From Mobula birostris (lineage: Eukaryota): DNA of 64,000 bases. The stretch is taken from NCBI RefSeq assembly GCF_030028105.1, contig NC_092379.1, positions 28,823,821-28,887,820 of the forward strand, in the 5' to 3' direction. The notes below the pieces were generated by a model, which saw nothing but the letters and a program-made list of their open reading frames with translations, was not told the origin of the DNA and did no database searches. The position numbers and the translations under genes are program-made. Shown here piece by piece: positions 5,254 to 51,776 of the stretch (position 1 is its first letter; every line of letters starts with the position of its first letter).

Positions 5254-6437
5254 ATGTGCAGACAACCGAAGGTTGGATGCTGATGTTAGAGAATGAAGAT
5301 GATACCTGGAATGGCGAAATGGCCTGTTCTTTCTCCTCTTGCCAATGATTGTTACGTTGTAACTCATTCTGGTTACTTTGGTTGACTGTTCAGAAATTTG
5401 ATCGGCTCAGCTCATTTTCTCAGTAATCAGAGCAGAAAGCATTGTGACGATAGTCAAGGGCAAAAACGAGAACTTCTTTCTTCTGTGGTTCCGGATTTAA
5501 AAGGAAAATGGACTCCCTCTCCACGAGGCACTTACACGGAAGCTTCTTTCGGAGTGCAGTGGCTCTCCTCGGAGCAGATGGTTCAGCAGCCTCGGTGTTT
5601 ATAATGCTGAAGATGCTGTCTGCCAAAAATAAAAACATATCGATTGAACGGTTTTCATCTGTGTTGCAGAGAGAAGGGTAAGCATTGTTGGACATATAAA
5701 GTTTTGATCTGGCTTACACAGTAGACCGAGGTCACTTCTCCTGGCAAAAGCAGCCGGGGTATTGAGACTTCGATACGATTGAGAGACATTGCCTTCAGAT
5801 TGTGAGCTGAATATGGTGGAATCAGAACAGGAAAGGTAGGCAACCTGCGACCAGATAGGGAACAGCTATCGGGAAGCTGGGGGGAGCGGGGTCGAAATAG
5901 GTTATCTAATAATTCTCGGGGGGTGGAGCAGGTTGGACAGAAGGGATTTTACTTTGATCAGAAGAAGAGAAAGGGAACGGGATTCCTAGAACATTTGAAC
6001 ATTCAGAAATAAAACTTAATAACGTCGTTTTGCAGATACCCCATGGGAAAATACGGTGCGGTTCCTTCAGTTTGCATTTTGCCTCATCCTGCTGTTGGTG
6101 GAAGCCGGCAAGGTCCAACTCTCCCTTTATATCAAAACGCCACCCTCTTCTGTGCATCTTTCGGTCCTCCTCCCCTTCCAGTTCGAAACTGTAAGCAAAT
6201 AAAGAAAAGCAATAAGCAACGTCTTTTCTGAGCATAGGAGTCGGGTGTTCAATCTCTTGTCGCCTAACGGTGTTGTCTTCATAGGGCTCTGACCTGGGAA
6301 GCTTTGAAGGTGCCTGAGTCTCGTGGCTGAGCTCACTTTGATGTGGAGGTTAGGCTGAGGTCACCCTCTGGTATGAGAGCTCACTGCAGTCAGGATCTAT
6401 TATTTGTCCAGATCCGCTTGCATCCCCAAAATCTGTG

Positions 6438-6719
6438 GGCTAATTTGTGCAAAGATACAGCGCAGAAACCCACACAAGAACTCCGGAGATTGTTTCCTGC
6501 TCTGGAAATCCGACATCCTGACAGGGTTGTCTTCAGACCGAGCCCCGTGTGCAAGGATGAACATTGTAATGATTTTTTTCCTAAAGTTTCCACGATGTTA
6601 ATTGTTCCACAGATAAGCAATGGCATATCCTGAGTAATTTCAGCTCAGTGACATGCTCTGTCCTTCCTAGTTCAATAATTCCTTCCGATCCTGAGTCAAC
6701 TAATCCGCCCCGTTCGTAC
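6438..6719 (-). pseudogene. TCR V pseudogene exon (family D-related); no leader seen, CR1 lies immediately upstream
   Basis: GTNGAD*LTQDRKELLN*EGQSMSLS*NYSGYAIAYLW...VLVWVSALYLCTN*, with several stops and a frameshift. RSS CACAGAT-23-ACAAATAAT at 6399-6437. Confidence 0.85.
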
Positions 6720-6769
6720 CTCTAACAAACCCAAAGTTTGCGAGGGGCGCCGGATAAATATGGGTAGAG

Positions 6770-8375
6770 TTAAGAAACTGCAAGGTTTAAGGAACCCTGC
6801 CGGCAGCTATGTACAAGCCTCCCGACAGCAGGTAGAATGTGGAGCACAGATCACAAGAGGAAATAGAAAAGGCGTCTCAAAGGGTAATGTTATGTTAGTC
6901 ATGGGAGATGTCAACATGCAGGTTGATTGGGAAAGTCAAGTTAGATATGGAGCTCAAGAGAGTGAGTTTGTTGAATGACAATGAAACGGCATTTTAGAAC
7001 AAATTGCCCGTCACCCTACAAGGGGATCAGTTGTACAGCTTTGGGTGTTGTGTAATAAACTGGAGATAATTAGTGACCTTAGTATACAAGAGCAATTTGA
7101 AGGCAGTCCTCCCAATATGATTGAATTCAACTTGAAATTTGCCAGTGAGAAAGTAAAGTCTGACGAAACAGAATTTCAACACAGTAAATAAAATTTCAGT
7201 GGTATGAGAGAGGAGTTGGTCAACGAACTCAGAGTGGAGGACTTGGGAGGACAGGCTGCAAGGGAGGACAGCAGAGCAGTAAGTGCGTGAAATTCTGGGG
7301 AAAATGAGAAAGGTGCCCGATAGCTGTATCCAAAAATGAGGAAACACGCAAATGGAAAAGTGGTACAACCGTGGCTGACAAGGGGAGTCAAAGCTAATAT
7401 AAAGGCAAAAGAGCGGATATACAGCAACGTAAAAATTAGTGGCAAGACAGAGGATCACGACGCTTTCAAAACCCTAGAGAACAACTAAAACAACCATCAG
7501 CAAACAATAGCAAAATGGATACTATAAGGTTTTTTTTTCAACAATGTAAAATAATAAAAGCGAGATGAGAGTGCATATAGAAAGCAAGAAACTGTCGACG
7601 AAGAAATAATGCTGGGAGACAAGTTGATGACAGATGAATGATATGATTATTTCGCATCAGGCTTCCCTGTGGAATATCCGAGCAGCGGGTCAGACATGCA
7701 AGGGTGCAAGGGAAGACATGTGAGTGCAATTACAGTTACAAGGGCGAAGGTCCTCAAAACGCTGAAGGACAGAAGGGTATATAAGTCATCCGAACAGATG
7801 AACTGCATACTTGCGCCCTAAAAGTTGTAGCGGTAGAGATTGCGGAGGCATCAGGAATGATTTTTCAAAATCATTGTCAGTGATATAGATGATGGAATAT
7901 ATAGCTGTGTTGCCAAGTTTTGTAGATGATACAAAGATGTATGGAAGGATAAGTCGTTCAGAAGAAACTTGCAGGCTGCAGGAGGACAGAAAGATTAGGA
8001 AAATGGGTCAGAGAGTGGCAGACGAAGTACAATATACCAAGATGAATGTCAACCCATTGGTATATGAAATAAATGTGCAGACTATTTCGTCAGCAGGGAG
8101 AAAATCCAAAATTCTACGATGCGAAGAAATTTGGTGGATCCAAGTGCAGAACGGCCGGACGGTTAACTTGCAGGAAGAGTCGATGTGAGGAAGGCAAATA
8201 AAATGTTAGCATTCATTTCAAGATGTCCAGAATACATGAGCAGAGATATAATGCAAAGGATTTGTAAGACAAGCGAGGCCTCACCTTGAGCATTTTGAAC
8301 AGTTTTGGGTTGCTATTTTAACAAAGATGTACTGACATTGGAAAGGGTTCAGAGGACATTCACAAGGATGACACC
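6770..8375 (+). mobile_element. Degenerate CR1-type LINE (endonuclease remnant and RT 3' part, internally deleted)
   Basis: GDVNMQVDWESQV...ESEFVE endonuclease motif and FVDDTK RT motif. The 3' part is duplicated at 42840-43312. Confidence 0.8.
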
Positions 8376-8558
8376 GTCACTCCCGCAAGCAAAGCAGCAT
8401 TCCAACTAACAGAAAAATGTAGTCAGTAATTTCTCCCCTTTCCCCTGGAGTTTAGCCTTCTTAAGTCAATCACGTGACAGTGGTGGCTATGTGTTTGCGC
8501 CCGGCTGTTTGCCGGCAAAGTGCTCACTCTAGCGAGCGCTCACTGCATCACGGAGGTC

Positions 8559-8597
8559 GGATTTTGTCCAGAGCCGTCATCGCCTTGCAACACTGTG
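8559..8597 (-). other. 23-RSS of the 8598-9022 V pseudogene
   Basis: CACAGTG + 23 nt + ACAAAATCC. Confidence 0.95.
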
Positions 8598-9022
8598 GGC
8601 AGCATGGCACAAAGATAAACGGCGGAGTCAGAAACAAGAGCACCAGAGATGTTCAAATGGACTGCCTTGTTGTCACGCTGCCAACCAGCGGTAAACCTCG
8701 CTGGATTCTGGTCCATTATCCCAGTGCTATATACCGTCAGCAAATTATCTTGGAGATTCCACCCGATGCTGAATGTACCAAAAAATATATGTAGGATCGC
8801 CAGTGTAATTACAGTTCATTGTTACACTTTATTCTTCCGCAATCGTTAATTCAAGAGGCCATTGCGTCACCGAATCTTTCCCATTTGTTCCTGGAATAAA
8901 AGGACAGAATGCATGAACAGATCGGGCTTTCTTCGTACATACAGAACAGATATAGGCCGTTACCGCGGGCACTCACCGGGTATCATAGTCAATATAATCA
9001 GCAGATAACACTGAGAATTCAT
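8598..9022 (-). pseudogene. TCR alpha/delta-like V pseudogene (family B)
   Basis: Leader MNSQCYLLIILTMIP 8977-9022 with GTGAG donor. V exon 8598-8890 reads GTNGKDSVTQWPLELTIAEE*SVTMNCNYT...WYIQHRVESPR(+1 nt)LLTVYSTG...SDSAVYLCAML; one in-frame TAA plus a frameshift. Confidence 0.95.
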
Positions 9023-9289
9023 GATGTCTGCCTTCAAACTCGACCGAAAGAGAGCTTACTTTCAATAAGATAATATCCTTGACTGATATTGAAGAGTAAA
9101 CTCAGAACTGCAGCGTATTTCAGCTTGCGTAAATCTGGGGGCGTTGCCCTGCCAATGGATTGATTGACTGTGAGCACCGATCTGCGCTGGGGGATGTGCT
9201 TTGTGTACTAGTCTCTTGTCACTATGCGGTTCAGCCTTCTCTCTCCAGGAAAGTTGTTGTCGCTTGAGTCTTGTCGACGGACGAGAGTT

Positions 9290-9420
9290 GGATGAAAAAT
9301 TTGCAGATGTTCAAAATCCAATGTTCAAAAACTTAGGAGGGAGTCAGCAGGTCAGGCGGAATCTGTAGAAAATGTAAATAGTCGACATTTCGGCCCAAGA
9401 CCCTTCTTCGGGACTGAGAA
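9290..9420 (-). mobile_element. Penelope-element terminal fragment (copies at ~44650-44760 and 55310-55455)
   Basis: Similar to the terminal sequence of the Penelope copies at 17065-17210 and 63400-63499 (cagcaggtcaggc...gtcgac...gagacccttc). Confidence 0.6.
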
Positions 9421-9635
9421 GTAAGCAGGGGGATGCATAAATTAAACCGTGAAGGAACATGAAAGAATCTGACTGAAAGGGATAGGTGAAACCAGATAGC
9501 TGGGAAAGGCCAAGCGCTGTAGAAGTAAGAATCTGACGATCTTATTAAGGCATGATCTGACTGAATTTCGGAGCAGGTTCGACGGGTCAAACGGCATACT
9601 CCTAGTCTTATTTCTTATGGCCTTATGTTCGGCCC

Positions 9636-9830
9636 TTCCACGGTCATTAATTTCCTCATATCCTGAGTTACCGAATTTACCCCACTCGTATTTGTAACAA
9701 ATCTCGGAGAGCGTGAGTGGTGCCGAATCTTAATAACGGTGTAGAACACGCGCAAACTGTTGAAGAAGAAATTATCCAGACAGAGCAGCCATTAATATCA
9801 GCAACAAACACCAGGGGGATACGGTGTCGG
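9636..9830 (-). pseudogene. Truncated V pseudogene (leader and FR1 only)
   Basis: Leader-like CLLLILMAALS; exon start TSGVNSVTQDMRKLMTVEG, cut off by a CR1-tail/SINE sequence. Duplicate at 55670-55870. Confidence 0.75.
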
Positions 9831-9869
9831 CCTTGACATCAACAACAGGATTGCATCAAATTGTGAGCC

Positions 9870-12335
9870 AGCTGAAGGTAATTACGTCACGTCAGGAGCA
9901 TCAGAGGCTAGGGGGAGACACGTGACCTTCCTCCCGAACGGGATTGGTATAATGCCTATGATGTGCCTTCGACTTGCAAGGCGTGTTGGCTCTTGGTCAG
10001 ATTCTCTTAGGGCTTCATTTTACCCCTCTTACTTTGCATAGTGTAGTAGATGTCTGTTGTGTCTTCTTAATGGCAGATGTTGGAGACCTGAGAGATCCAG
10101 AGTCGCCCAGGGAACTACATCTGGAAGGAATGCATCTGACTGAAGCTCCTTGAAGACCATGGTAGGGATCTGGAATGACCAGCTCAATGACCTTCGGCTT
10201 GTACGGCAGAGCGAGACGATAATCGATCGGAGTCATAGGGAAGTAGCCAGTAGAAGCTGCAAGAGGCAAGTGGCTATTGGACTATCAGGTGAAATGGAAA
10301 TGTGAATACACAGCACAGCTGTGGTCATTCCTGTCAATAATAAGAATATTTTTCTGCATACCAATCTGGGGGATAAATTCACAGGGGAATGCTAAGGTGC
10401 CAGGGCTACTGAAAAGGAGCATAGGCCCGTGCTGCAGATGGGAAAGAGGAAGAAGAAAGGAGTGGTAGCGATAGGGGACTTAACAATCATGAGAACAGAC
10501 AGGAGATTCTGAGACTGCGAGCACAGCACCTTGATGGTATTCTGCCTCCCACATGTCAGTTTCGAATCGCGTCCACGACATTTTAGAGAGGAAGGGACAG
10601 CATCTAGATGCATGGTACACATTCGCATCAATGACACGCGAAGAAAGAGCAAAAGAGATCTTGAAAAGCGTATTTGCAAAGCAAGGAAGAAGGCTCTAGC
10701 AGATGTTGACCGGTTCGAGGGATGTGCAGTTACTATTACAAGGCTCAAAGAGCCGAAAGAGCTAAGTCACCTGTACAAGGTGAACTGCAACCTCAGGTTC
10801 TGAAAGATTAGTGGTAGAGATTATGGCGATATTATTAATGATCTTTCAAAATTACTGGACTGTGGTATTGTGCCAGAGGAATGTAAAATTAGAAACGTCA
10901 CTTTACTGTTTAGGAAAGGAAGAAATTAAAGACCTTTTAGCCTGATATCAGTGGATGCGAATATGTTGGATTCAATTGTTAAGGATGAATTATGAAACAT
11001 TTGGTGACACAGGACCGGATAGGAGAAAGTCAGCATGGTTTCCTTAAGGAAAATATTGCATGCCGATCATGTTGGAATTATTTGAGTGGACTACACGAAG
11101 GTCAGATAAAGCGGGTGCAATGGATGTTGTATGTGAGGAGTTTCATAAGGTCTTTGCCAAGGTGCCAAACGTGAGGAAGCTTACCAAGTTAAGAACGTTT
11201 GGTATTACAGGAACGTTACTGGTATGGTTATAGCACCAGCTGTTTGGCAGAAGGTAGCGAATAGAACTAAAATAATCACTCTCTGGTTGGCTGCGGGTGC
11301 GAAGTGGTGCTCCACAGGGGTCCATGCTGGGACCAATGCTTCTTATGTTGTACATCAATGATTTAAATGATAGAATCCTTCGCTTTGTTGCCAGGTTTTT
11401 CCATATGATACGAAGACTGATGAAGGGTCAGAGTGTATTGATAATCTACAGAAGGCCTGAGACAAATGACCAGAATGGGAAAGAGAACGGTAAATGAAAT
11501 ATAACGTTGGAAAATGCATGGTCATGAACTTTGTTGGAAGAAGTAATTATGCAGACTATTTACTGAACGTGGACAAAAGCCAAAACGAAGATGTACAAAG
11601 ATGCAACGCGGCTTGGTAGTCCTTGTGCAGAACACTCTAAAGGTTAATTTTTTCGTAGAGTGGGTGGTGAGGAAGACACCAGACAACGTTAGAACTCATT
11701 TCAGGGGGTCGAGAATACAAGAGTAGGGATGTGACGCTGACGCTTCAAGGCACGAGTGAGGTCACACTTTGGGTATTGCGAACAGTTTTGGGCTCTTCAT
11801 TGAAGAAAAAATCCGCTCGCATTGGAGATATTTCAGAGGAGGTTGCCAAGGATGATTCCAGTAATGCAAGTGTTATCGTACCAGAAAAGTTTGATGCTTA
11901 TGAGCCTGTGTTCGCTGTAATTTAGAAGGATGAGGGGGAATCTCACTGAATCGTTTCGAATGTTGAAAGCCCCTAGGCAGAGTAGATGTGTAAAGGGTGT
12001 TTAATACGATGGGGGGGGGGGTCTAGGAGAATAGGGCAAAGAGTCAGGCGAGAGGCATCAACTTAATACAGAGATGCGGAGAAATTCCATCAGCGCGAGT
12101 GCGGTGAATTTATTGCATTTGTTAGCACAGGCAGCTGTGGAGGACAGGTGGTTGGGTATACTTAAGGCAGAGCGTGATATGTTTTTGATTAGCCACGGTA
12201 TCAAAGGTTCCGAAGGGACGGCCGAGAGTAGGGCTGCAGAAGGATCAAACGATCAGCCATGATTTAATGCAGGAGCAGATTCCATAGCCCAAAAGCCCTA
12301 ATTCTTCTATTAAGTTTTCTGGTCTTATGCTCTTA
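9870..12335 (+). mobile_element. Degenerate CR1 LINE retaining ORF1 (zinc-finger/SGNH esterase) and RT remnants
   Basis: PGNYI..C..LKLL..DLRLVRQSETIIDRSHREV and VAIGD...MV.CLP...VHI..ND ORF1 motifs; GAPQGSMLGP RT motif; CR1 tail ending ggtcttatg at ~12330. Duplicate at 55900-58355. Confidence 0.8.
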
Positions 12336-12974
12336 CCCTCTCTTTCAAAATGAACAAGCTTTAGCAGACTTTCAATCCTCGCTCTCGGACCTCATCGCGT
12401 GTCGTCTTCTTGCTGTATCGGGACCAGAATATGTCTCGTTCCCTTCTTTATCTCCCTTAATCACTCTTTTCACCTGTTTCCTCTCCTTTCCGCGCAGTCT
12501 CTGCACCCCGTTCTTTCCGTTTCTCTTTTTTTATGCCTTCCACTTTGCGTCTCTAACTGTCGTTCACTCACTTTCCCTTCCCCTTTCTCCCTCTCTCTCT
12601 CTCACACTCTCTCTCTCTCTCTGTCTCTGTCTCTCTCTCTCTTCTCTTTCTCTAGCTCTCTCTTCTATCTATCTCCTACCTCTTCTGCACGGATTGCATG
12701 TGGATGCTCCTAATAGGCAATCATTTATCCCTCGCATAGGTGTATTCCTTCCTGTCCAAAACTGTTAGTCGGGGTTCTGGGTGTGTTGTAGCTCTTATCG
12801 CCCTGCCCCTTCGTCCTCTTGTAGCCTTTGAGCAGGGAGGTTGTGTTGTCTCAGGACGGGGCGTTGTACGATGTTGAGCAGGATGCGGTGGGCTGCGGGC
12901 GCGCTCCGTTCCATGTGCGCATTGTACGCAGGATTTGTTCTGTCCAGATCGGCAATCACACTGCATTAGGGAAT

Positions 12975-13125
12975 GCTGATCATGCAAATAATTAGCGGAA
13001 CACTGCACAAGACAAAGCAGTCTCATCCTTCACCCCTCATCCTTCTAAATTACAGCGAACACAGACTCATATTTGAATCCAAGCAGTGGCCATTTTATGT
13101 CCAAACAACCTGAATTCTTCACCGG
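12975..13125 (-). pseudogene. 3' fragment of a V pseudogene with decayed RSS
   Basis: Homologous to 58815-58950, which reads HYLDSITFSGFVPGTAMYICMVS. Downstream ...gccgatctgg-ACAGAACAA matches the RSS flank of the 6438 V. Confidence 0.55.
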
Positions 13126-13146
13126 TGTAGTTTGCTCCTGATTTTC

Positions 13147-13160
13147 GCCGCCCTCTAGCG
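13147..13160 (-). promoter_or_regulatory. CTCF-type motif (distal)
   Basis: Minus strand CGCTAGAGGGCGGC, close to the CCASYAGRKGGCRS consensus. Duplicate at 59013-59026. Confidence 0.55.
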
Positions 13161-13752
13161 ACGGTTGACTGCATCACACCTCGCACACACAGTATGTACT
13201 TTCAACATAAATTCACTTTGAACAATGACCATTTCTCACAGTCCGGAAATGCAACGACCAAAATACTGTTTGCATTCTCTATCACGCTAAACATCCACAG
13301 GATCTGTCGCATTATCTAAATACTCAGTCTAAATCATAAGGAGCTACTGCAATATCCTTAATTTCAGCAGCATGACACTTGCTATTCTTTGTCAAACTAA
13401 AACAACGATTTGCCCACGCTCTGTTTTCCCCTCAGTGAACCGCTGTCCTATTTAAATATATTGCAGTTCCACTCCGGCCTTATTGCTTCTCCATGCAGAA
13501 GCTCGAACAATGTGGCCAAAGACAACGTCATTCTAGGTTGCCAATCGCGATATGCCGTTGAAGCAAAGAGGGTGGGTGAATGCACATTGCCGTATCCCGG
13601 AAATACATTATAAAGATCCAGTTTGAGTTTGCGTTGTAGTCATGAACTGTTCCATTACCTTCGGCGCCTTGTGTTGGTGATTGCAGCGCTGTTAAGTAGG
13701 GTACGTGACCACGGCTGATTTCAGTGTGCGCACTCCCAATTTACCGGCAAAA

Positions 13753-13766
13753 GACCCCCTCCAGTG
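13753..13766 (-). promoter_or_regulatory. RSS-proximal CTCF-type motif
   Basis: Minus strand CACTGGAGGGGGTC, 25 bp beyond the nonamer. Confidence 0.5.
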
Positions 13767-13791
13767 AGAGCTTTTTGCATTATACAGAACC

Positions 13792-25470: not shown

Positions 25471-25749
25471 ACAGGTGGACGTTAAGCGAACTCACATTCG
25501 ATAGACAGCTGTTATCGGCTGCGCTATGTAAAGCCCCAGTTTGGGTGCGCGTTGTAATCAGGAACATTCCTTTAGCTGCGGCGCCCTGTGCTGCTAATTG
25601 CAGCGATCTGAAGTAAGGCAGGAAGCCATGGCTGATTTCCGGGTGCGTCCCTCCCACTTTCTGGGCAAAACGACGTCCTCCACTGAGAGCATTTCGCATT
25701 ATTCAGGACCTGTTTCTTGTCCGGACCGCCATCTGCATTCAACTTTATG

Positions 25750-26387: not shown

Positions 26388-27312
26388 TTCTGGGTTTTTC
26401 TCCGCTCGTTCAAGGTCCCGCGTCCACCTCTCCGCGCCCCCCCCCCGCGCTCTATCCCGTCTCTCTGTCTCTCTTTCTCTCTGTCTCACACACTCTCTTT
26501 CTCAGTGTGCCCAACTGCCTCCGCCCCCTGTTCTCTGCAAAATCACAGCATATTCACATAGTTATCGATGTGTAATCCAAATCAGTTATGAATTTCCACG
26601 TGGTCACTTCGTCGTCTTCGTCAATATTACGCTGGAAGTATTTGTTTAGCCATTTGTTTATTTAGTTAGTTATTTGGAGGTATATCCCATAATTGTCCCT
26701 TAGATCAACATTTATCAGTCTTCCGCCATTGAACTAGTTATTCAATATTAGCAAGTGTTCATCTGGTTGTTCCCTAATCTTTGTTTGCTCTTAGGGAGCC
26801 AATCTCCTATCCATGCCAATAAACTCCTGATAGCATCCTTTAAGCAGCCACCCCTCCTTTCACATCTGGTATCGTCCTCTCGCCTGACCCATTTCCACCC
26901 TCAGGCCACTCTATCTTTGGGGGAGCTAATGCTAATAGACGCCACCTGAAATTTATCTTCATCTAAGCATTTAGTGTTACAGCTAATAGGATGCTGTCTG
27001 GTCATTTATACCCTCAGTGTCTTTAGGTTGCACTCATCTTCACTGCTAATCCCTCAAGGTGGTGGAAAATGATGTCCAGCAAAAAAAAAAAAAAAAATAG
27101 CCACAAGATATTGGTAGAGGCAAGAAAGGGAGACATGGTCACCGAGATGTAGTGGAAATGTTCCAGAAAACTGCTACGATATCCCTAGGTAAAGCTAAAT
27201 TTAAGAAGTTTTCCACAAAGTTTGGCGCATTTTGCTGCTGAATGCCGCGTTTTAAGTTGACCACGTGATCCTAATGCTCTGTACGTGCAGCTGTTCCAGT
27301 TTCCCAGCAAAA

Positions 27313-27326
27313 GTCGCCCTCTAGTG
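27313..27326 (-). promoter_or_regulatory. RSS-proximal CTCF-type motif
   Basis: Minus strand CACTAGAGGGCGAC, 13 bp beyond the nonamer (27340-27348). Confidence 0.6.
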
Positions 27327-27378
27327 ATCACACAAGGCTGGATGTTGCCCGTAACCGCTGTCTCCCTGCAACACTGAG

Positions 27379-33690: not shown

Positions 33691-34856
33691 GATGGAATTA
33701 TTTGATACACTAAACATACAATTAAAATGATATTTTCAGAAAGTTGAAACATACCTTTGGAAACAGATGCTATCAGTTTGTGCTCCTTCGACAGTAACCG
33801 GACGTTCTCACTGTTTCTCTCTTCCATCGGTGGGAAAAAAGACAAAGTTTTCAAAGCAAGTTCCCATGAAACAACAATAGACTATTCCCACTTGCAAGAG
33901 TATTAAACTGCAGGATGAAATTGAATATTAATCTTGGTATGACCTATCTCTTTATTTCCTGCCTGTGCTGCATTTTTAGACGTCTGTTACAGTTTAGTTT
34001 TGTATCCTTTTATTGTTTTACTTTGTACTGCCTCGATAAGCTGTGCAGTGAATTCATCTGAATAAGCAGAATCAATGCAATAATGCCACAATAATTTTTA
34101 AAAAATTGTTTTTAATTTAGATATGCAGCAAAATGCTACACGTGGTGATAACATCGGATCCGTTAAATCTGACTGGGAAACAGGATTATACAAGCAATCA
34201 ATCTGTTGTGATCCCATTCCCTCTCTCTTTCTTCGCTCACTTTTATACTGAAAATGCCTGCAAAATATGAATCTCAGGATAGTGTGCGGTCACGTATATG
34301 TACTTCAATCATAAATTTAATTCAAACATTGAACCTTTTCTCATAGCTTGTGAATGCAACGACCAAAATAGTATCTGCATTCTCTAACACGCTAAGCATA
34401 GGCAGGTTCTGCCGAATTATCTAAATACTCAGTATAAATCATAAGTAGCTGCTGCAACATTCTTAGTCTCAGCAGCATATCACTTGCAATTATTTGTCAA
34501 TTGGAAAAAGTCCAATTTTCACACCCTCTGTTTTCCTTTAGTCCGCCATTGTGCCATTTAAATATATCCCGGTTCCACTCCGTCCTCATTATTTCACACT
34601 GCAGATACTTGAACAAAGTGGCCAAACACGATGTCAGACAAGGCTGTCAATCGTGATATGCCGTTGCTGCAAAAGATAGTGGGTGATTATACATTCCGGT
34701 ATCCCAGAAAGTTATAAACTCAGTTTCTGACCGCGTTGTAATCAGGAACTTCTCCTTTAGCTTCGGCGCCTTCTGCTGCTGAAAGCAGCGCTCTTAAGTA
34801 GGGCACGTGACTGTGACTGATTTCTGGGTGCGCCCTCTGCAGATTCCTCGGAAAGA

Positions 34857-34870
34857 GGCGCCCTCCAGTG
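34857..34870 (-). promoter_or_regulatory. RSS-proximal CTCF-type motif (second candidate at ~34828-34842)
   Basis: Minus strand CACTGGAGGGCGCC, 26 bp beyond the nonamer. A tandem motif CTGCAGAGGGCGCAC lies further out. Confidence 0.65.
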
Positions 34871-34896
34871 AGAGCTTTTTGCAAATATACAGAACC

Positions 34897-34935
34897 AGTT
34901 TTTGCACGGACCCGCCGTCCCCATATAACAGTGTG
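34897..34935 (-). other. 23-RSS
   Basis: CACACTG + 23 nt + GCAAAAACT. Confidence 0.92.
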
Positions 34936-35358
34936 GTGCTCGTTGCACAGAGATACATGGCAGAGTCCGACACAAGAGCTTCACGGATATTCAATTGAGA
35001 CGTCTTGCTGCCTTTCTGTAAAGTAGCAGTAATCCTCTCTGAATACCGCTGCGTTCCTCCTGTGCTATATAACTTCAGCAAATAATTTGGAGCTCCTCCA
35101 CTATGTTGAATGTACCAAAGGATATCTGCATTAGCGTCGGTGTAATTACAGTTCAGTGTTATGTTCTGTCCTTCCTCAATCGTTCTATCGAGAGGATCCT
35201 GCGTCACTGTATCTTTCCCACTCGTTCCTGCAAGAAAGGACAGAACACATCAACAACGCTGGATTGTATTGAATGCAGGGCAAATTCGCTAGTCAGCTTC
35301 TCTGAGACTCACCAGGCAGCACGGTCAATGCAATCAGCAATGAACAGAGAGAAATCAT
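34936..35358 (-). CDS. Intact TCR alpha/delta-like V gene segment (family A, short form)
   Basis: Leader 35313-35358 MISLCSLLIALTVLP; exon 34936-35227 GTSGKDTVTQDPLDRTIEEGQNITLNCNYTDANADILWYIQHSGGAPNYLLKLYSTGGTQRYSERITATLQKGSKTSQLNIREALVSDSAMYLCATS. GT-AG intron, no stops. Confidence 0.94.
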
Positions 35359-35566: not shown

Positions 35567-35570
<4 letters not shown>

Positions 35571-35630: not shown

Positions 35631-35635
<5 letters not shown>

Positions 35636-37442: not shown

Positions 37443-37475
<33 letters not shown>

Positions 37476-37989
37476 CACCCCTCCCCCCACCCCCCTCGCT
37501 ACCTAGCGCTGTGGGGAAATCCGTTTACAAGCTGCCATTTCACTCGGTATTCCGGTATTCAATGTCAATATGAAATAAAATCAATTGTTCTCCACTTTTA
37601 AGAAGCTAATGTTAATAGAGTCCACCTGAAATTTATCTTCATCAGAAGGATTTACATGACAGCTTAGCCGATGCTGTCTAGTCACATGCACTCGCAGTAT
37701 CTCCAGGTTGCACTCATCTTCACTGTTAATCGCGCAAGCTCGTCAAAAATTATGTCCAGACAATTGTTAACCACACAATATTGTTATAGGCAACAGACAC
37801 ACAGCATTGTTATGGACACTGAGATATAGTGAAAAATGTTTCGGAAAAATGCCACAGTAATATGAGGTAGAGCTGAACTCAAGAAGTCTTCCTCAATGTT
37901 TGGCGCATTTTGCTGCTGAATGCAGCATTTTAAGTCGACAGGGTGATCCTTATGCTTTGTGCGTGCGGCTGTTCCAGACTCCCAGCTAA

Positions 37990-38003
37990 GGCGCCCTCTA
38001 GTG
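37990..38003 (-). promoter_or_regulatory. CTCF-type motif
   Basis: Minus strand CACTAGAGGGCGCC, a near-consensus match. The adjacent RSS nonamer is deleted. Confidence 0.65.
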
Positions 38004-38043
38004 ATCACGAGTCCTGACCCACAGTGTCCCTGCAATTCTGTAG

Positions 38044-43458: not shown

Positions 43459-43473
43459 GGGCTCCCTCTACCG
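43459..43473 (-). promoter_or_regulatory. RSS-proximal CTCF-type motif
   Basis: Minus strand CGGTAGAGGGAGCCC, 24 bp beyond the nonamer. Confidence 0.5.
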
Positions 43474-43497
43474 AGCGCTCACTGCATCACGGAGGTC

Positions 43498-43536
43498 GGA
43501 TTTTGTCTGGAGTCGTCATCGCCTTGCAACACTGTG
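43498..43536 (-). other. 23-RSS
   Basis: CACAGTG + 23 nt + ACAAAATCC. Confidence 0.95.
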
Positions 43537-43969: not shown

Positions 43970-44948
43970 TGTGTCTGGCTTCAAACTCGATCGAAAGAGA
44001 GCTTATTTTCAACAAGTTGATATCCTTGACCGTTATTGAGGAGTAAAATCAGATCTGCAGCATATTTCAGCTGGCGTAAATCTAGGGGCGTTGCGTTGCC
44101 TGCCAATGGATTGATTGGCTTTAAAAAACTCATCAGCTCCGGTCCGTGCACCAATCACAGATCGGTTTGTTTCAGTTCCTCTATATAGTTTTATACATTC
44201 GACGCCCGGAGCCTTAAATAGCGCCGCGCTAGCCTCTGTGCGAGAGTGGTTATACTTCACTTTCTCTCTTGCGTTCTTCTTCCAGTCAGGATCCCATTTC
44301 TATTTCTCTCTCCTCCCGATGTTTATCGCTCTACTCTCTGTTCTGCCGATCACCATCTCTTGTTCTTTCACTTCTTGATTTCTCTTTACGTCTCTCCGAG
44401 TTATCCACTTTGTCATTCCATCATACCAAACCGCCCACTTTCGCCTCCCATTTTACTCACCATCTCAACCGCCCACCGTTTTCCCTGGATATCACTTCCT
44501 CTGCTCACTCGTAAACCGAAACTCACACTGAGACGTATTTATCGTCACATTTCTCCCTGCGGAAAAACGGCGAAACGCCACTGAGGCAGACAATAAGAAA
44601 AAAACTTGTTCACTCGGGGGAACGGGGGATGTGCTTTCGCTTGAGTCTTGTGGACGGACGAGAGTTTGGTGAAAAATTTGCAGATGCTGAAAATCCTATG
44701 CAATTCCCAAAACTCTGGAGGAAGTCAGCAGGTCAGGCGGAATCTGGGGAAAATATAAATACGGGATTTGTCGATCTCACCTCTTCTCCTTCGTTGTAGT
44801 TTCAATGACACTTCATTTCTAGCAATGGATCTTCTTCTTTGCTCCCTCTTTCGGTTCTCTCCAATATTTCCGTTGCTGTTTCACTCAATAGTTCTCTGTC
44901 TACCTCTGTATTCTAATCTAATCCATTTTGTCTACCCCATACCCCCGG

Positions 44949-45007: not shown

Positions 45008-45571
45008 TCACTTCGCGCTCCCCACAGCTTGCATACTCAGCCACAGCAATTCAATCAGATTTTTTTTTTCTAAATCATCATTGTAGATTTTAACTAGCAG
45101 TAGAAACAACCTTTAACCGATTGCCAGTTCACTTGGTATTCATTGTGAATCTTAAACAATACCATCCATTGCTCACCACTTTTAGAAAGCAAATGTCAAT
45201 ACAGTCTAATTGAAATTTATCTTCATCAGAAGCATTTAGTGTGTCAGCTAATCCGATGCTGTCTAGTCACATATACCCTCAGTATCTCCAGTTTGAGCTC
45301 ATCTTCACTGTTAACATTTCAAGGTGGTGAAAAAATTATATCCAGCCAAACGTCGTTGACCACAAGATATTGTTGCAGGCAACAGAAAGAGACATGGACA
45401 CCGAGATATAGTGAAAATGTTTCGCAAAAGCTGCCAAAATATTCAAAGGTAAAACTGAATTCAAGAAGTGTTCCTCAATGTTGGGAGCATTTTGCTACTG
45501 AATGCAGTATTTTAAGTCGACCAAATGATCCTCATGCTTCGTGCGTACGGCTGTAGCAGATTCCCAGCAAA

Positions 45572-45585
45572 GGCGCCCTCTAGTG
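45572..45585 (-). promoter_or_regulatory. RSS-proximal CTCF-type motif
   Basis: Minus strand CACTAGAGGGCGCC, 13 bp beyond the nonamer (45599-45607). Confidence 0.65.
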
Positions 45586-45636
45586 ATCACGCAAGGTTGG
45601 ATTTTTTCCGGCCCCGCTGTGTCTCACAATACTGAA

Positions 45637-46170: not shown

Positions 46171-46215
<45 letters not shown>
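46120..46215. repeat. (TC)n microsatellite
   Basis: Direct inspection. Confidence 0.95.
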
Positions 46216-46216
<1 letters not shown>

Positions 46217-48362
46217 GATGCCAGTGGGAGAGATGGAGAAACTACTGCCTATTCCCAGCTGAGCATATCGGTATAAAAAGAATGCTTAATACTGACTATA
46301 ACATCGAAATAGTGAGAGCTGATTCCTCTCTCGCTTTTGAACCAGCCATATCAGTCTCCAATTTATTAGAGAGAGAGCGAGAATGCCTGTGAAACAATGA
46401 AATGTTGCAATAAACAGCTAGCTTTGTTGTACTGTGGACCAAGCCACTCTTGTGTTTGTGGTTGTTGGTGGAAATGCTGATGCTTTATGCTAGAATAAAT
46501 GAGAGAGGCAGGAGCTGGTTAGGTTAATGCTGCTTCTCGCTGATTGAGCAACGGATATGGCAGGGGACTTTTAGGTTCTTATCTTTTTTTCTGATATTGA
46601 TGCTTTGAGTTTTTGTTCTGTTTTAATGATGTCTGTGGAGACTTTAAATTTCAAGTTGTGTATTTTGTAGCTCTCTGAATTTAGGCGGAACCATTCAAGC
46701 AAGCTGGACATTCGTTTCGCTGCACCCTGGTACATCTGACAACAACAAATATATAATATACATAAACCAGTTTCATGTAACTGTCAGCGTCTGCAAAGTG
46801 AAGGAATATGTCAGGCTATCCTTCATTAGTTCATTGAACATGGGTTGAGCAGGAAAGTGGCGGTGGTGGTGGACTGCAAAGTGCCTATCATGACACCCTG
46901 GCGATATCTGGTGTCATGTCCTAGGGATTCGGTTCGATTCCGACCTTCCGATGTGTCAGCGGATACTTACGTGCTCAGCTTCCACAATTCCCGAGTTGCT
47001 ATGTTTTCCAATGCCCGAAAAAGACGCTCTGGGTAGCACGTGCTCGTGATCGGAGATCAGTGAATGTACATGTTAAGAGGAATTTGTGAAATTGGACAGA
47101 CAAATCAGTTGACAATAAGACCATTAGATATAGGAACTGAAGTAGGCCATTTGGCTTGTCGAGACAGCTCCGCCATTTCAGAGGAGAAGATGCTGTGATA
47201 GAATTATTCGATACACTAAACACATAAGTAAAAAGAGATTTTCAAAAAGTCGAAATATACCTTTGGAAACAGATGCTATCAATTTGTGCTCCTTCGACAG
47301 TAACGGGACGATCTCACTGTTTGTCTCTTCCATCCATGAGAAAAAAACAAAGTTCTCAAAGCATGTTCCCATGAAACAACAATAGACTATTCCCACTTGC
47401 AAGAGTATTAAACGGCAGCATGGAATTGAATCTTAATCTTGGTATGAACTATCTCTCTATTTCCTGCCTGCGCTGATTTTTATACGTCTGTTACAGTTTA
47501 TTTATGTATTCTTTTATTGTTTTACTTTGTACTCACTCAATAAGCTGTGTAGTGAATACATCTGGACAAAGAGAATCAATGCAATAATGCGACGATAATT
47601 AACAATTTCCGTTTTCAATTTAGATATGTAGCAAAATGCTGCACGTGGTGATAACATCGGATCCGTTCAATCCGATTGGGAAACCAGATTATACTAGCAA
47701 TCAATCTGTTGTGACCCCATTTCCTCTCTCTTCCTTCGTTCGCCTTTATACTGAAAATGCCTTCAAAAATATGAATCTCAGGATAGCATGCGGTCACGTA
47801 TATGTACTTTAATCATAAATTTAATTCAAACGTTGAACCTTTTTCTGACAGCTTGGGAATGCAACGACCAAAATAGTATCTGCGCTCTCCAACACGCTAA
47901 GCATCCGCTGGTTCTGCCGAATTATCTAAATAGTCAGTATAAATAGTAAGTAGCTGCTGCAACATCCTTAATCTCAGTAGCATGTCACTTGCAGTTACTT
48001 GTCAGTTGGAAAAAGTCCAATTTTCACACCCTCTGTTTTCCTTTAGTCAGCCATTGTGCCATTTAAATATATCCCGGTTCCACCCCGTCCTCATTATTTC
48101 ACACTGCAGATACTTGAACAAAGTGGCCAAAGACGATGTCAAACAAGGCTGTCAATCGTGATATGCCTTTGCAGGAAACGATGGTGGGCGATTGCACATT
48201 GCGGTATCCCAGAAAGTTATAAATCCCAGTTTGTGTCCGCGTTGTAATCAGGAACTGCGCCTTTAGCTTCGGCGCCTTCTGCTGCTGAATGCAGCGGTCT
48301 GAAGTAGGGCACGTGACTGTGACTGATTTCTGGGTGCGCCCACTGCAGATTCCTCGGAAAAA

Positions 48363-48376
48363 GGCGCCCTCCACTG
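48363..48376 (-). promoter_or_regulatory. RSS-proximal CTCF-type motif
   Basis: Minus strand CAGTGGAGGGCGCC, 25 bp beyond the nonamer. Confidence 0.55.
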
Positions 48377-48401
48377 AGACCTTTTTGCAATATACAGAAC
48401 C

Positions 48402-48440
48402 AGTTTTTGCACGGACCCGCCGTCCCCATATAACAGTGTG
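48402..48440 (-). other. 23-RSS
   Basis: CACACTG + 23 nt + GCAAAAACT, identical to 34897-34935. Confidence 0.92.
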
Positions 48441-48854
48441 GTACCCATTGCACAGAGATACATGGCAGAGTCCGACACAAGAGCTTCACGAATATTCAAT
48501 TGAGACGTCTTGCTGCCTTTCTGTAGAGTAGCGGTAATCCTCTCTGAATACCGCTGCGTTCCTCCTGTGCTATATAACTTCAGCAAATAATTTGGAGGTC
48601 CTCCACTATGTTCAATGTACCAAAATATATCTCTATTAGCGTAGGTGTAACTACAATTCATTGTTACGTTCTGTCCTTCCTCAGTCGTTATATCGGGAGG
48701 ATCCTGCGTCACTGAATATTGCCCACTCGTTCCTGCAAGAAAGGACAGAATATAACAACAACAATTGAATGCCGGGCAATCTCGCTAGACAGCTTCGCTG
48801 AGACTCACCAGGCAGCGCAGCCAATGCAATCAACACTGAACAGAGGGAAATCAT
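48441..48854 (-). CDS. Intact TCR alpha/delta-like V gene segment (family A, short form)
   Basis: Leader 48809-48854 MISLCSVLIALAALP; exon 48441-48732 GTSGQYSVTQDPPDITTEEGQNVTMNCSYTYANRDIFWYIEHSGGPPNYLLKLYSTGGTQRYSERITATLQKGSKTSQLNIREALVSDSAMYLCAMG. No stops. Confidence 0.94.
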
Positions 48855-49025
48855 GCTGTCTAATTTCTGGCTGAATCGAACGGCAGATTCCTTCCAGGGC
48901 GTTACTATCACAAGAGATATTGTGGCAGGAGATATTTTTAGCGATACCTTTCACCTTGTGTAAAACTGGAGGTGTTTCTCTGGTTAAAAGATTGGCTGAC
49001 AGAAAGAACCGAGCCTTCCTGAGCA

Positions 49026-49064
49026 CCAATCAGAAGCTGCTTTGTATCCATTCGTCATTCGTCA
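49026..49064 (-). promoter_or_regulatory. Putative V promoter module with duplicated CRE half-site
   Basis: TGACGAATGACG-19 nt-CTGATTGG, 172 bp upstream of the ATG. Confidence 0.6.
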
Positions 49065-49789
49065 TTCTGCCTGCATTGAAACACTTATTCAAAGGTCCTC
49101 AAGAGTTCATCCAGATACTTTCAAATTTTTGTTTGCTGCAAAGGTGCCAATTTCTTATCTACGCCAATAGACTCCGGACAGCACTTTCTGTGTAGCCACC
49201 ACTTTCTTCATAAAACAAAAAAACTTCACGTCTGGCATTTCCCTTGTAATTTCTTCCATTCGCCTCAAGGTATCATCCTCCCGCATGAGCCATTTCCACC
49301 CTTAGGTCAAAGCACTAGTTGTCCACTTTACTTATGCCCCTTATCAATCATACACAGCTATTAAGTGACCCCTTACCTTCTGTCGTTCCAAAAAGAAAGG
49401 TCCTTGCTCCCGGAAACTGAATGTCCCGTGGAATATAAATGCACTTGCGGATGTGTAACTGAATTTCAACATTACGATTGGTTCTCCTTTAATCGTCGCT
49501 GAACAGAGATAAATCTTTCCCAGACGATTCTGCAAAAGAGGGACAAAATGACTGAACATTCAATGCCCCCATTGCACATGCGAGACACCAGCTCACTATT
49601 TGTGCAAAGGTACGCCGAGCAGCATAACCCATATTATCGGTAAGGATCTGGAAGCACATAGTGTCCACTTTCAGGCGAGATGTGAGCCAGATTACATTCA
49701 AGAAGCTAATACCATAGACTGGCGAGAATTATGTCAGATACGCTACACCCAATCACTTTGTGAGAAACCTCCGTTGTTGCAAGAGGTTG

Positions 49790-50908
49790 TTTAAGGAGCC
49801 GACCCAAAAGCAAGACACTGACACCGAAGTACGAGGAACTGGACTAAGATTATCAAGAATGCAAGGGAAGTTGGGAAGCAGGATTGATCAGAGGGTAATC
49901 CAGGACAGAACAAAGCGTAAGCAGCGATGAGCGTAGCTGGACACGGACACAGGCCCTGGACTAGACTAGCACTCAGGACCTGGGACAGGACTTGCACTAG
50001 GAGTACAGGACCCGGACTTGGAACTTGGAACAAGGAGCCTGGACTAGGAACTCGGAACTCTGGAACTGGACTCTGGACAAGGAAGCTGGGTCTTATCTCG
50101 GACCCAGAACCAGGGCCTAGGCTAGGACTCGGGACTATGATCTTGGCTAGGACTCGGGAGAAGGACTTGGATCGGACTTGATATTCGACTGGGACTTGGA
50201 TCGGAATTGAAACTCGACTGGGACCTGGAACACGAATCCTTCACCTGGACTGGATTGGAACACGAAGCCTTGACTTGGACTGGACTGTAACACGAAACAC
50301 AGAGCCGGGACCCCTCCTTGGATATAGGATATGGGGCCGGGGCTCATCTTAGACACGGAACACCGAGCCACGAGCCCTCTTTGGGGAAAAGACGTAGGGC
50401 AGGGACACTTCTTATGCACAGAACACTGAACACGAAGAGACAGATCTCGACTCAAGCTAACAGCAAACAGCTGGCCCTACCTAGCGAAGGCGAGGACACG
50501 AGGAGACAAGTCTACACAACAATAGACTGTTCCTTATATTAACGACACAAGGCTCCAGTCTCACACCGGCGGGTTAACTTGACAGGGATTCTGACGAAGT
50601 CACAGACGAGGTCGCAGACAAGAACGCAGACGAGGTCACTAAAGAGGTCACTGACGAAGGTTGCTGACAAGGTTTACGAGCAGGTTTCAAACGAGGTTAC
50701 AGACGAGGTAACTCACGGGTTTCTGAAGGGAACGGTCCAGCCGTTATCAATGGACCCCAGAGCAATTTATGTTGCCAGCCCGAGACGAGAATCAGGTGCT
50801 TCAGTTAAGGCCCCCCACGGAACAAGGGAAAAATGAAATAACCGGACTACCAAATCCACGGACCGGACCGTGAACCGGAATGGTCACTTCGCTGAATGGA
50901 CCGTGGCA
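49790..50908 (-). mobile_element. Duplicate of the LTR-like repeat element at 36190-37142
   Basis: Same tandem arrays; this copy is longer at its low-coordinate end. Confidence 0.4.
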
Positions 50909-51216
50909 TCCGTAAGTTGGTCTTCTAAATGGGAGCTGAACCAGGGAAGTCAGAACTGAACCTATTTAGCTAGCGATCTGAATGGAACTGCGACACTTTC
51001 AGTTTCTTAATAATTTACTCTAATTCTAATGTATGTGCCGATGTCACAACTCCGTCCTTCGTTGTGCTTTAAATGATACTTCATTTCTAGCAATGGATCA
51101 CCGTCCTTGGCCCGTCTTTCGTGACTCTCTTAAATTTTCGTCACCGTGGCACGCTGTGTCTGTCTCTGTAGGCCAATCTAGTCCGTTGTTTGTCTACCCT
51201 ATACCTCCGCCGTCCA

Positions 51217-51269
<53 letters not shown>

Positions 51270-51762
51270 CACGCTCCCTAGCTCTGTGGGTACATCCGTT
51301 TACAAGCTGCAGTTGACTCGGTATTCCGGTATTCATTGTCTATATGAAAAACACCAATTGTTCTCCACTTTTAAGAAGCTAATGTTAATAGAGTCCATCT
51401 GAAATTTATCTTCATCAGTAGGATTTACATGACAGCTTAGCCGATGCTGTCTAGTCACATGCACCCTCCGTATCTCCAGGTTGCACTCATCTTCACTGTA
51501 AACCGCGCAAGCTCGTCAAAAATTATGTTCAACCAAATGTTAACCACACAATATTGTTATAGGCAACAGACACACAATATTGTTAACGACACTGAGATAT
51601 AGTGAAAAATGTTTCGGAAAAATGTCACAGTAATCGGAGGTAGAGCTGAATTCAAGAAGTGTTCCTCAATGTTTGGCGCATTTTGCTGCTGAATGCAGCA
51701 TTTTAAGTCGACAGGGTGATCCTTATGCTTTGTGCGTGTGGCTGTTCCAGTCTCCCAGCTAA

Positions 51763-51776
51763 GGTGCCCTCTAGTG
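51763..51776 (-). promoter_or_regulatory. CTCF-type motif
   Basis: Minus strand CACTAGAGGGCACC. Confidence 0.65.

What the first reader, a model, noticed from the sequence alone, without database searches (positions are those of the whole stretch)
6361..51776. Co-oriented CTCF-type motif just beyond the RSS of almost every V segment
Seen in the sequence: a motif resembling the CTCF core (minus strand CAC/GTAGAGGGCGCC type) sits 24-27 bp beyond the nonamer in families A, B and D-related (6361, 8520, 13753, 25672, 34857, 43459, 48363) and 13 bp beyond it in family C (27313, 45572; the equivalent position at 37990 and 51763). Weaker traces occur at 18719 and ~22660. All have the same orientation, even though the flanking DNA differs a lot between families. 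Established knowledge: in mouse Igh, D-proximal VH segments carry CTCF-binding elements just 3' of the RSS, which stall cohesin-driven RAG scanning and raise usage; mouse Tcra V CTCF sites are mostly promoter-side. Inference: this fish TCR V array may use an Igh-like RSS-CBE architecture, which would make loop-extrusion control of V choice very old. I know of no description of this in cartilaginous fish, but cannot verify novelty.
Basis: partly seen in the sequence, partly recalled or inferred. Interest (0 to 1): 0.75.

Follow-up and report, generated by a model that had tools for sequence, protein, structure and literature searches.

The report
CTCF-type motifs behind ray TCR V signals
In this ray or skate T-cell-receptor V-gene array, every V segment is followed by a conserved stretch that starts with a same-direction binding motif for the DNA-looping protein CTCF, a layout known from mouse antibody heavy-chain genes; the motif is strong only behind dead V genes, and binding is untested.

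Summary
The motif block is real. All 13 minus-strand TCR alpha/delta-type V segments carry a homologous, co-oriented CTCF-core-like sequence. It lies 23-25 nt (families A, B, D) or 12 nt (family C) past the 23-RSS nonamer.

By a CTCF weight matrix, only 6-7 of the 13 beat shuffled flanks. The four strongest (scores 14.5-17.3) lie behind family C pseudogenes with broken RSSs. The four intact V genes score 9.7, 8.9, 6.3 and -2.0.

The flanks do not differ a lot: they align across families for at least 250 nt. The motif is the sharpest conservation peak in a multi-block module that also holds an E-box, ACTTAA and a second CTCF-like site.

- **Little skate:** strong motif at the same place behind 3 of 3 V segments.
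- **Teleost Chelmon rostratus:** 10 of 12.
- **Bamboo shark:** 0 of 6.
- **Shark-like contig:** 0 of 1.
- **Sucker, frog, lizard:** 0 of 30. Their arrays have co-oriented CTCF motifs elsewhere.

An Igh-like layout is therefore supported at motif level. A very old origin is not supported; lineage-specific gain is more likely. CTCF binding is untested.

The scan noted the same layout before in other windows of this genome.

The parts
37989..38007 (-). Strong CTCF-type motif behind pseudogene V38 (family C; heptamer broken, nonamer deleted)
   Evidence: PWM score 17.3, p 7e-7; IUPAC core with 1 mismatch
45571..45589 (-). Strong CTCF-type motif behind pseudogene V45 (family C; no CAC heptamer)
   Evidence: Score 17.3; 0 of 1000 shuffles reach it
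51762..51780 (-). Strong CTCF-type motif behind pseudogene V51 (family C; nonamer deleted)
   Evidence: Score 16.6
27312..27330 (-). Strong CTCF-type motif behind pseudogene V27 (family C)
   Evidence: Score 14.5; 0 of 1000 shuffles reach it
43459..43477 (-). Moderate CTCF-type motif 23 nt past the nonamer of intact V43 (family B)
   Evidence: Score 9.7, p 5e-5; shuffle fraction 0.025
34856..34874 (-). Moderate CTCF-type motif behind intact V34 (family A; G in place of the conserved A at matrix position 9)
   Evidence: Score 8.9
34828..34846 (-). Second CTCF-like site in the V34 module
   Evidence: Score 10.6
34764..34782 (-). Distal strong CTCF-like site of the V34 module, about 153 nt after the heptamer
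   Evidence: Score 14.4, p 4e-6
48362..48380 (-). Weak CTCF-type motif behind intact V48 (family A)
   Evidence: Score 6.3; shuffle fraction 0.057
48270..48288 (-). Distal strong CTCF-like site of the V48 module
   Evidence: Score 14.4
13752..13770 (-). Decayed homologue of the motif behind intact V13 (family A)
   Evidence: Score -2.0
13146..13164 (-). Strong same-strand CTCF motif 646 nt past the V13 RSS; its duplicate is at 59012-59030
   Evidence: Scores 15.0 and 10.45; the duplicated flank is 89% identical
25671..25689 (-). Decayed motif behind pseudogene V25 (family A; heptamer CATAAAG)
   Evidence: Score 2.7; the distal site at 25579-25597 scores 7.95
8520..8538 (-). Decayed motif behind pseudogene V8 (family B; perfect RSS, broken reading frame)
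   Evidence: Score 1.7; a G-to-T change at a core G
6359..6377 (-). Decayed motif behind pseudogene V6
   Evidence: Score 1.5
34705..34896 (-). Conserved post-RSS module of V34: CTCF-like core, TTTGCCGG-type block, GCGCAC, E-box, ACTTAA, GCTGCATTCAGCAGCA...GGCGCC. Homologous modules follow every V.
   Evidence: Alignment; identity profile; BLAST of the modules
34804..34809 (.). E-box CACGTG in the V34 module. It is also intact at 43409-43414, 48310-48315, 8471-8476 and 27262-27267.
34897..34935 (-). 23-RSS of V34. Other clear 23-RSSs are at 13792-13830, 43498-43536, 48402-48440 and 8559-8597.
34938..35210 (-). Intact V exon of V34. The other intact V exons are 13833-14114, 43537-43820 and 48443-48715.
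59467..59658 (-). Orphan copy of the family A module. The V and RSS are missing, the break is exactly at the nonamer end, and the motif is decayed.

Best explanation
An ancestral CTCF-binding element sits at the start of a conserved post-RSS module of about 170-200 nt. All V families of this batoid TCR alpha/delta array inherited that module through block duplication.

The motif reads in the forward CTCF orientation on the V coding strand. Bound CTCF would therefore face the side the V genes are transcribed towards, presumably D/J/C, and would stall cohesin extruding from that side. This is how the RSS-adjacent CBEs of mouse proximal VH genes work.

In this window the element is intact and kept by selection behind four family C pseudogenes. 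Each of these lies about 1-3 kb upstream of the next V gene, so they probably act as locus anchors or insulators rather than as helpers of their own dead V. The element is moderately preserved behind V34 and V43 and decayed elsewhere. V34 and V48 have a second strong site about 90 nt further on.

Shown here: sequence, position, orientation, conservation and occurrence in other species. Inferred: CTCF binding and any effect on recombination.
For: - **Motif strength:** the PWM scan gives 7 minus-strand hits at p<=1e-5 against 0.64 expected, and six of them lie within 650 nt behind a V RSS. The independent IUPAC check agrees.
- **Conservation between families:** identity is 0.73 at the motif and 0.2-0.29 in the spacer just before it.
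- **Conservation within family C:** 2 of 19 motif columns vary against about 42% elsewhere (Fisher p 0.003).
- **Fit to the CTCF matrix:** conservation per position tracks the information content of the matrix (rho 0.47, p 0.04).
- **Little skate:** V genes only about 50% identical in protein carry 16.7-17.3 motifs at the same place and strand.
- **The mammalian matrix applies in skates:** oriented MA0139.1 motifs mark skate TAD boundaries.
- **Known precedent:** the Igh layout is documented.
Against: - There is no occupancy data. No ChIP, ATAC or RNA run was on offer for this organism.
- Only about half of the copies pass a motif test, and intact V13 has none at the conserved position.
- The best sites follow dead V genes.
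- A non-consensus T at matrix position 4 is kept in 11 of 13 copies, and family A has G at the strongly preferred A9.
- The motif is one of several conserved blocks, so the constraint could belong to another factor.
- The copies are paralogues, so raw enrichment counts overstate the evidence.
Confidence: 0.55

Rival explanations
1. The post-RSS module is a regulatory element for another function, such as an E-box-driven germline or antisense promoter or enhancer-like element that opens the RSS. On this reading the CTCF-like core is bound by another factor or only resembles CTCF.
For: The module has several conserved islands. TCACGTG...ACTTAA is as conserved as the motif (0.64-0.83). The CACGTG E-box is intact behind 3 of 4 functional V genes but only 2 of 9 pseudogenes. 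The non-consensus T at matrix position 4 is conserved.
Against: The family C core matches the CTCF consensus with one mismatch. The same core recurs in the little skate where the rest of the flank differs. No transcripts were available to show promoter activity.
Confidence: 0.2
2. There is no function. The block is neutral flank carried along by recent block duplications or homogenised by gene conversion, and the CTCF likeness is chance in GC-rich DNA.
For: The array is built from block duplications of 83-89% identity. Families A and B show no extra conservation of the motif within the family. Half of the copies have decayed. CpG content of the module is not unusual.
Against: There is a between-family conservation peak against a 0.2-0.3 neighbourhood. 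The family C motif is conserved while the V exons beside it decay. Strong motifs occur in the little skate behind V genes about 50% identical. The shuffle tests also argue against chance.
Confidence: 0.15

Closest known systems
RSS-adjacent CTCF-binding elements of mouse D-proximal VH segments (for example the VH81X-CBE)
   Same: A CTCF motif lies within 100 bp downstream of the V RSS, all sites have one orientation on the V strand, and pseudogene V segments carry them too.
   Different: The locus here is TCR alpha/delta-type and the lineage is a batoid. The motif is part of a longer module with an E-box and a second CTCF-like site. The strongest copies follow dead V genes. Binding and an effect on V usage are shown in mouse but untested here.
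Mouse Tcra/Tcrd V-region CTCF sites
   Same: The type of locus is the same. Most sites point towards J-C (129 of 144 in mouse). Family C sites lie about 1-3 kb upstream of the next V gene.
   Different: The mouse sites are mostly upstream of V promoters or intergenic, not beside the RSS.
RSS-adjacent CTCF motifs in the Chelmon rostratus TRAV-like array
   Same: Strong motifs (13.8-16.7) lie 32 or 65 nt past the nonamer on the V strand, behind 10 of 12 V segments.
   Different: The flank sequence is unrelated, so this is probably an independent gain. I found no published description.

Membership tests
RSS-proximal V-segment CTCF-binding elements (Igh proximal-VH type) | Sequence matches the CTCF core motif at a significance used for site calling | tested here: met
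   Met for 6 of 13 at p<=1e-4 and 4 of 13 at p<=1e-5. It is not met for V6, V8, V13, V18, V22 and V25. The matrix was recalled from memory, but the IUPAC check agrees.
RSS-proximal V-segment CTCF-binding elements (Igh proximal-VH type) | Lies within about 100 bp downstream of the V RSS | tested here: met
   The core starts 12 or 23-25 nt past the nonamer.
RSS-proximal V-segment CTCF-binding elements (Igh proximal-VH type) | All sites have one orientation, pointing to the D/J/C recombination centre and convergent with anchors there | tested here: inconclusive
   The orientation is uniform and forward on the V strand. The position of J/C and of convergent partners lies outside the window. Only unverified scan notes place them on the expected side.
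RSS-proximal V-segment CTCF-binding elements (Igh proximal-VH type) | Occupied by CTCF and cohesin in rearranging lymphocyte precursors | not testable with these tools
   No ChIP, ATAC or Hi-C run was on offer for this organism.
RSS-proximal V-segment CTCF-binding elements (Igh proximal-VH type) | Raises the usage of the adjacent V during RAG scanning | not testable with these tools
   This needs repertoire data and mutants. Indirectly, the strongest sites follow V genes that cannot rearrange.
RSS-proximal V-segment CTCF-binding elements (Igh proximal-VH type) | Conserved beyond the neutral flank | tested here: met
   There is a between-family peak of 0.73. Family C has 2 of 19 variable columns, p 0.003. 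The feature is not met within families A and B.
Promoter-side V CTCF sites (mouse Tcra type) | CTCF motif just upstream of the V promoter | tested here: not met
   No hit at p<=1e-5 lies upstream of any intact V within about 1 kb. There are only weak hits (9.0-9.3) at 26890 and 36047, about 0.7 kb upstream of V25 and V34.

The most novel reading that the evidence does not exclude
RSS-adjacent, J-ward-pointing CTCF anchors are a recurrent solution that arose independently in batoid TCR alpha/delta arrays, a percomorph TCR alpha array and mammalian Igh. All jawed-vertebrate V arrays keep co-oriented CTCF motifs somewhere. In this ray the strong anchors are kept by selection behind dead V segments, which survive as carriers of loop anchors for the functional V gene that follows them.
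Probability: 0.3. Interest if true: 0.75.

Novelty: new member of a known kind. Interest (0 to 1): 0.55.

Why it matters
How loop extrusion came to control V(D)J recombination is known almost only from mouse and human. A batoid array, and a teleost array, with the Igh-type RSS-CBE layout gives natural, independent test cases.

It also gives a contrast within cartilaginous fish, since skates and rays have the layout and the bamboo shark does not. That contrast could show whether RSS-adjacent anchors change V usage.

Selection on motifs behind dead V genes suggests that some pseudogene V segments persist for architectural reasons.

Tried and rejected
- **The search for homologous proteins with V34:** no candidate. 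The HMM search of representatives was used instead.
- **The look-up of encoding contigs:** P0023 and P0096 are not on record, P0061 is a 952-nt assembled contig that ends within the gene call and gives no flank, and P0048 has no DNA.
- **The look-up of sequencing runs:** only DNA-type contigs of the organism and of a close relative, with no RNA, ChIP or ATAC.
- **Read laying at 80% likeness:** this mixed contigs of many paralogous V segments, so it could not serve as an orthologue test. I draw no conclusion from it.
- **Random-substitution test against a family-weighted consensus:** unstable because the ancestral 19-mer is uncertain. I use only the per-position trend.
- **CpG observed/expected:** the module is not a CpG island relative to the window, 0.7-0.9 against 0.69.
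- **Rfam:** no RNA family in the window.
- **REST/NRSE reading of the distal TTCAGCAGCA block:** only the left half-site matches by eye, so I dropped it.
- **RAG-mediated origin of the orphan module:** rejected, because the break is at the nonamer end and not at the heptamer.
Full report
**What is in the window**

All V segments lie on the minus strand. A tblastn search and three-frame reading find 13 V segments with a recognisable 3' end, plus one 5' fragment at 31946-32137. They are TCR alpha/delta-type, with 23-nt-spacer RSSs.

Four are intact: V13 (exon 13833-14114), V34 (34938-35210), V43 (43537-43820) and V48 (48443-48715). The rest carry stops or frameshifts.

The four family C members (V27, V38, V45, V51) also have broken RSSs. 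None has a usable CAC heptamer at the right spacing, and V38 and V51 have lost the nonamer.

The array grew by block duplication. The block at 32.6-41.3 kb (V34 plus V38) matches 46.2-54.4 kb (V48 plus V51) at 83-89% identity. The block at 7.9-13.8 kb matches 42.9-44.1 kb plus 54.5-59.7 kb.

**The observation**

Its best form reads TCACTAGAGGGCGCC, which is one mismatch from the CTCF core CCASYAGRKGGCRSY. The core starts 23-25 nt past the nonamer in families A, B and D and 12 nt past it in family C.

I scored it with the JASPAR MA0139.1 count matrix.

The window has 29 hits at p<=1e-4 against 12.8 expected. At p<=1e-5 it has 7 minus-strand hits against 0.64 expected per strand.

Scores at the conserved position:

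| V segment | Status | Score |
|---|---|---|
| V38 | pseudogene, family C | 17.3 |
| V45 | pseudogene, family C | 17.3 |
| V51 | pseudogene, family C | 16.6 |
| V27 | pseudogene, family C | 14.5 |
| V43 | intact, family B | 9.7 |
| V34 | intact, family A | 8.9 |
| V48 | intact, family A | 6.3 |
| V25 | pseudogene, family A | 2.7 |
| V8 | pseudogene, family B | 1.7 |
| V6 | pseudogene | 1.5 |
| V13 | intact, family A | -2.0 |
| V18 | pseudogene | -8.4 |
| V22 | remnant | -26.9 |

Against 1000 dinucleotide-preserving shuffles of each 100-nt flank, V27, V34, V43 and V45 are significant and V48 is borderline at 0.057. V6, V8, V13, V18, V22 and V25 are not. V38 and V51 fell outside the tested interval only because their nonamer is deleted; V38 carries the same 19-mer as V45 and V51 differs from it at one position.

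No comparable opposite-strand hit lies in any flank. An independent tool check with the IUPAC core and at most 1 mismatch finds exactly the three best sites, against 0.25 expected.

So the block and its orientation are real. 'Almost every V has a CTCF-type motif' is true only for about half of them by a motif test.

**The flank is a conserved module, not divergent DNA**

The downstream flanks of all families align for at least 250 nt.

Identity between families A, B and C runs as follows:
- about 0.55-0.6 through the RSS and its spacer;
- 0.2-0.29 between the nonamer and the motif, where the 12 versus 24 nt indel lies;
- 0.73 at the motif;
- about 0.6 over the following TTTGCCGG-type block;
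- 0.64-0.83 at TCACGTG...ACTTAA;
- about 0.6 at GCTGCATTCAGCAGCA...GGCGCC;
- 0.2-0.4 beyond that.

The AGAGGG centre of the motif is the longest run of near-invariant columns in the whole flank. It is better kept than the heptamer or the nonamer. Conservation per position follows the information content of the CTCF matrix modestly (Spearman 0.47, p 0.04). A non-consensus T at matrix position 4 is kept in 11 of 13 copies, and family A has G at the strongly preferred A of position 9.

The last block is itself a strong same-strand CTCF-like site behind V34 and V48 (score 14.4, at 34764 and 48270) and a weak one behind V25 (7.95). V34 has a third site at 34828 (10.6). V13, whose proximal motif has decayed, has a 15.0 site 646 nt further on at 13146. 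That site is kept in a duplicate at 59012.

The CACGTG E-box is intact behind V8, V27, V34, V43 and V48. The module is not a CpG island relative to the window and matches no Rfam family.

**Is the motif under constraint?**

In family C, 2 of 19 motif columns vary, against 43% of columns in the V exon and RSS and 42% downstream. Fisher's test gives p 0.003, and only 1.4% of all 19-column windows are as conserved. These V genes are dead, so the motif is being kept for its own sake, or this is a roughly 1-in-70 chance result.

In family A the motif (6 of 19 variable) is no better kept than the V exon. In family B (3 of 19) it is no better kept than anything else, and the pseudogene V8 has lost a core G.

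Each family C site lies roughly 1-3 kb upstream of the next V gene on the same strand: 51762 before V48, 45571 before V43, 37989 before V34 and 27312 before V25. That is a position comparable to the promoter-side sites of mouse Tcra.

**Other species**

A profile of the four intact V genes found 1780 relatives. I fetched the DNA around those that could be looked up. Species names for four assemblies were read from a paper's data list. The bamboo shark and the lizard are assigned from the papers that cite those accessions.

| Locus | Species (assembly) | V segments with a strong same-strand motif in the 200-nt flank past the V end |
|---|---|---|
| L003 | Little skate, Leucoraja erinacea (GCA_028641065.1) | 3 of 3 |
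| L007 | Teleost Chelmon rostratus (GCA_017976325.1) | 10 of 12 |
| L006, L008 | Bamboo shark (GCA_003427335.1) | 0 of 6 |
| L009 | Shark-like contig | 0 of 1 |
| L001 | Chinese sucker | 0 of 8 beside the RSS (one hit about 145 nt past it) |
| L002 | Spadefoot toad | 0 of 12 |
| L004 | Lizard | 0 of 10 |

- **Little skate.** The motifs score 16.7-17.3, on the V strand, about 24-31 nt past the nonamer. The V proteins are only 47-55% identical to those here, and DNA alignment to this window ends at the motif.
- **Chelmon rostratus.** The motifs score 13.8-16.7 and lie 32 or 65 nt past the nonamer, in a flank unrelated to the ray's.
- **Species without the RSS-adjacent motif**.

In the sucker, toad and lizard arrays, strong CTCF motifs are still 5-25 times more frequent than chance and mostly co-oriented with the V genes (8 of 10, 11 of 13 and 9 of 13). 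They lie 0.6-4 kb from the V genes.

The broadly shared feature is therefore a one-directional CTCF motif array. The RSS-adjacent placement looks lineage-specific: batoids, and separately at least one percomorph. The samples are small, one to three loci per species.

**What is known**

- In mouse Igh, several dozen D-proximal VH segments have CBEs directly downstream of their RSSs. These promote use of that VH during RAG scanning, and all VH CBEs share one orientation.
- ChIP-seq places Igh sites within 100 bp of the RSS for the proximal VH families. [quoted passage not shown]
- In the little skate, MA0139.1 motifs in ATAC peaks show the orientation bias at TAD boundaries expected for loop extrusion, so the mammalian matrix is a fair proxy in batoids.
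- Full-text searches found no description of RSS-adjacent CTCF motifs in fish TCR loci. The library is incomplete.

**Mechanism proposed**

Shown here: a forward-oriented CTCF-type motif just past the RSS, with uniform orientation, constraint in family C and conservation in a second batoid.

Inferred: CTCF binds the strong copies. Cohesin extruding from the D/J/C side is stalled there. This holds the neighbouring chromatin, and for RSS-competent V genes their RSS, near the recombination centre.

Because the best copies follow dead V genes, I think a locus-architecture role (anchors or insulators spaced through the array) is more likely here than a per-V boost of usage. V34 and V48 may rely on the distal 14.4 site.

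Unverified scan notes place a candidate E-alpha and a TCR-delta D-J relic 4.6-5.2 Mb at lower coordinates. That is the side these V genes and motifs point to. I did not test this.

**Earlier notes of this scan**

The same layout was noted before in other windows of this genome, in both TCR beta and TCR alpha/delta arrays. My results agree independently with three of those notes:
- that intact motifs sit behind dead V genes;
- that the little skate shares the motif;
- that the TCR alpha/delta version looks limited to skates and rays.

**Verdict**

This is a new member of a known kind, RSS-proximal CBEs, seen at motif level only. Binding data would decide the question.

Noticed in passing
59467-59658 (compare 13601-13791): An orphan copy of the family A post-RSS module, 88% identical to the V13 flank. 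The V exon and the whole RSS are replaced by unrelated sequence, with the break exactly at the distal end of the nonamer. The duplicated flank runs on to 59014.
   Followed up: partly
13146-13164 and 59012-59030, minus strand: A strong CTCF motif (scores 15.0 and 10.45) lies 646 nt past the RSS position, at the end of the duplicated V13-type flank, in the same orientation as the RSS-adjacent motifs.
   Followed up: partly
34804-34809, 43409-43414, 48310-48315, 8471-8476, 27262-27267: The palindromic E-box TCACGTG followed by ACTTAA is as conserved as the CTCF-like core. It is intact behind 3 of 4 functional V genes but only 2 of 9 pseudogenes.
   Followed up: partly
L007 (Chelmon rostratus, GCA_017976325.1), whole locus: A teleost TRAV-like array has strong CTCF motifs 32 or 65 nt past the nonamer of 10 of 12 V segments, on the V strand, in a flank unrelated to the ray's.
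   Followed up: partly
L001, L002, L004 (sucker, spadefoot toad, lizard): TRAV-like arrays have 5-25 times more strong CTCF motifs than chance. Most are co-oriented with the V genes but lie 0.6-4 kb away from them, not beside the RSS.
   Followed up: partly
32644-41258 versus 46175-54426; 7892-13791 versus 42861-44120 plus 54495-59658: The V array is built from large block duplications of 83-89% identity. Each block carries a family A or B V gene plus a family C pseudogene.
   Followed up: partly
15000-18500, 27900-30100, 61900-63100: Long ORFs with reverse-transcriptase-like sequence suggest LINE-type retroelements. Two of the three strong plus-strand CTCF hits (16621, 17473) lie inside the first one.
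   Followed up: no
40890-41900 and 53934-54353: ORFs that look like fragments of a hAT-type transposase, present in both copies of the large duplication.
   Followed up: no
18740-18776: Pseudogene V18 has an RSS-like signal with a spacer of about 13 nt instead of 23, directly followed by a decayed copy of the motif.
   Followed up: no
26890-26908 and 36047-36065, minus strand: Weak CTCF-like hits (scores 9.0-9.3) of similar sequence lie about 0.7 kb upstream of the family A V genes V25 and V34.
   Followed up: no
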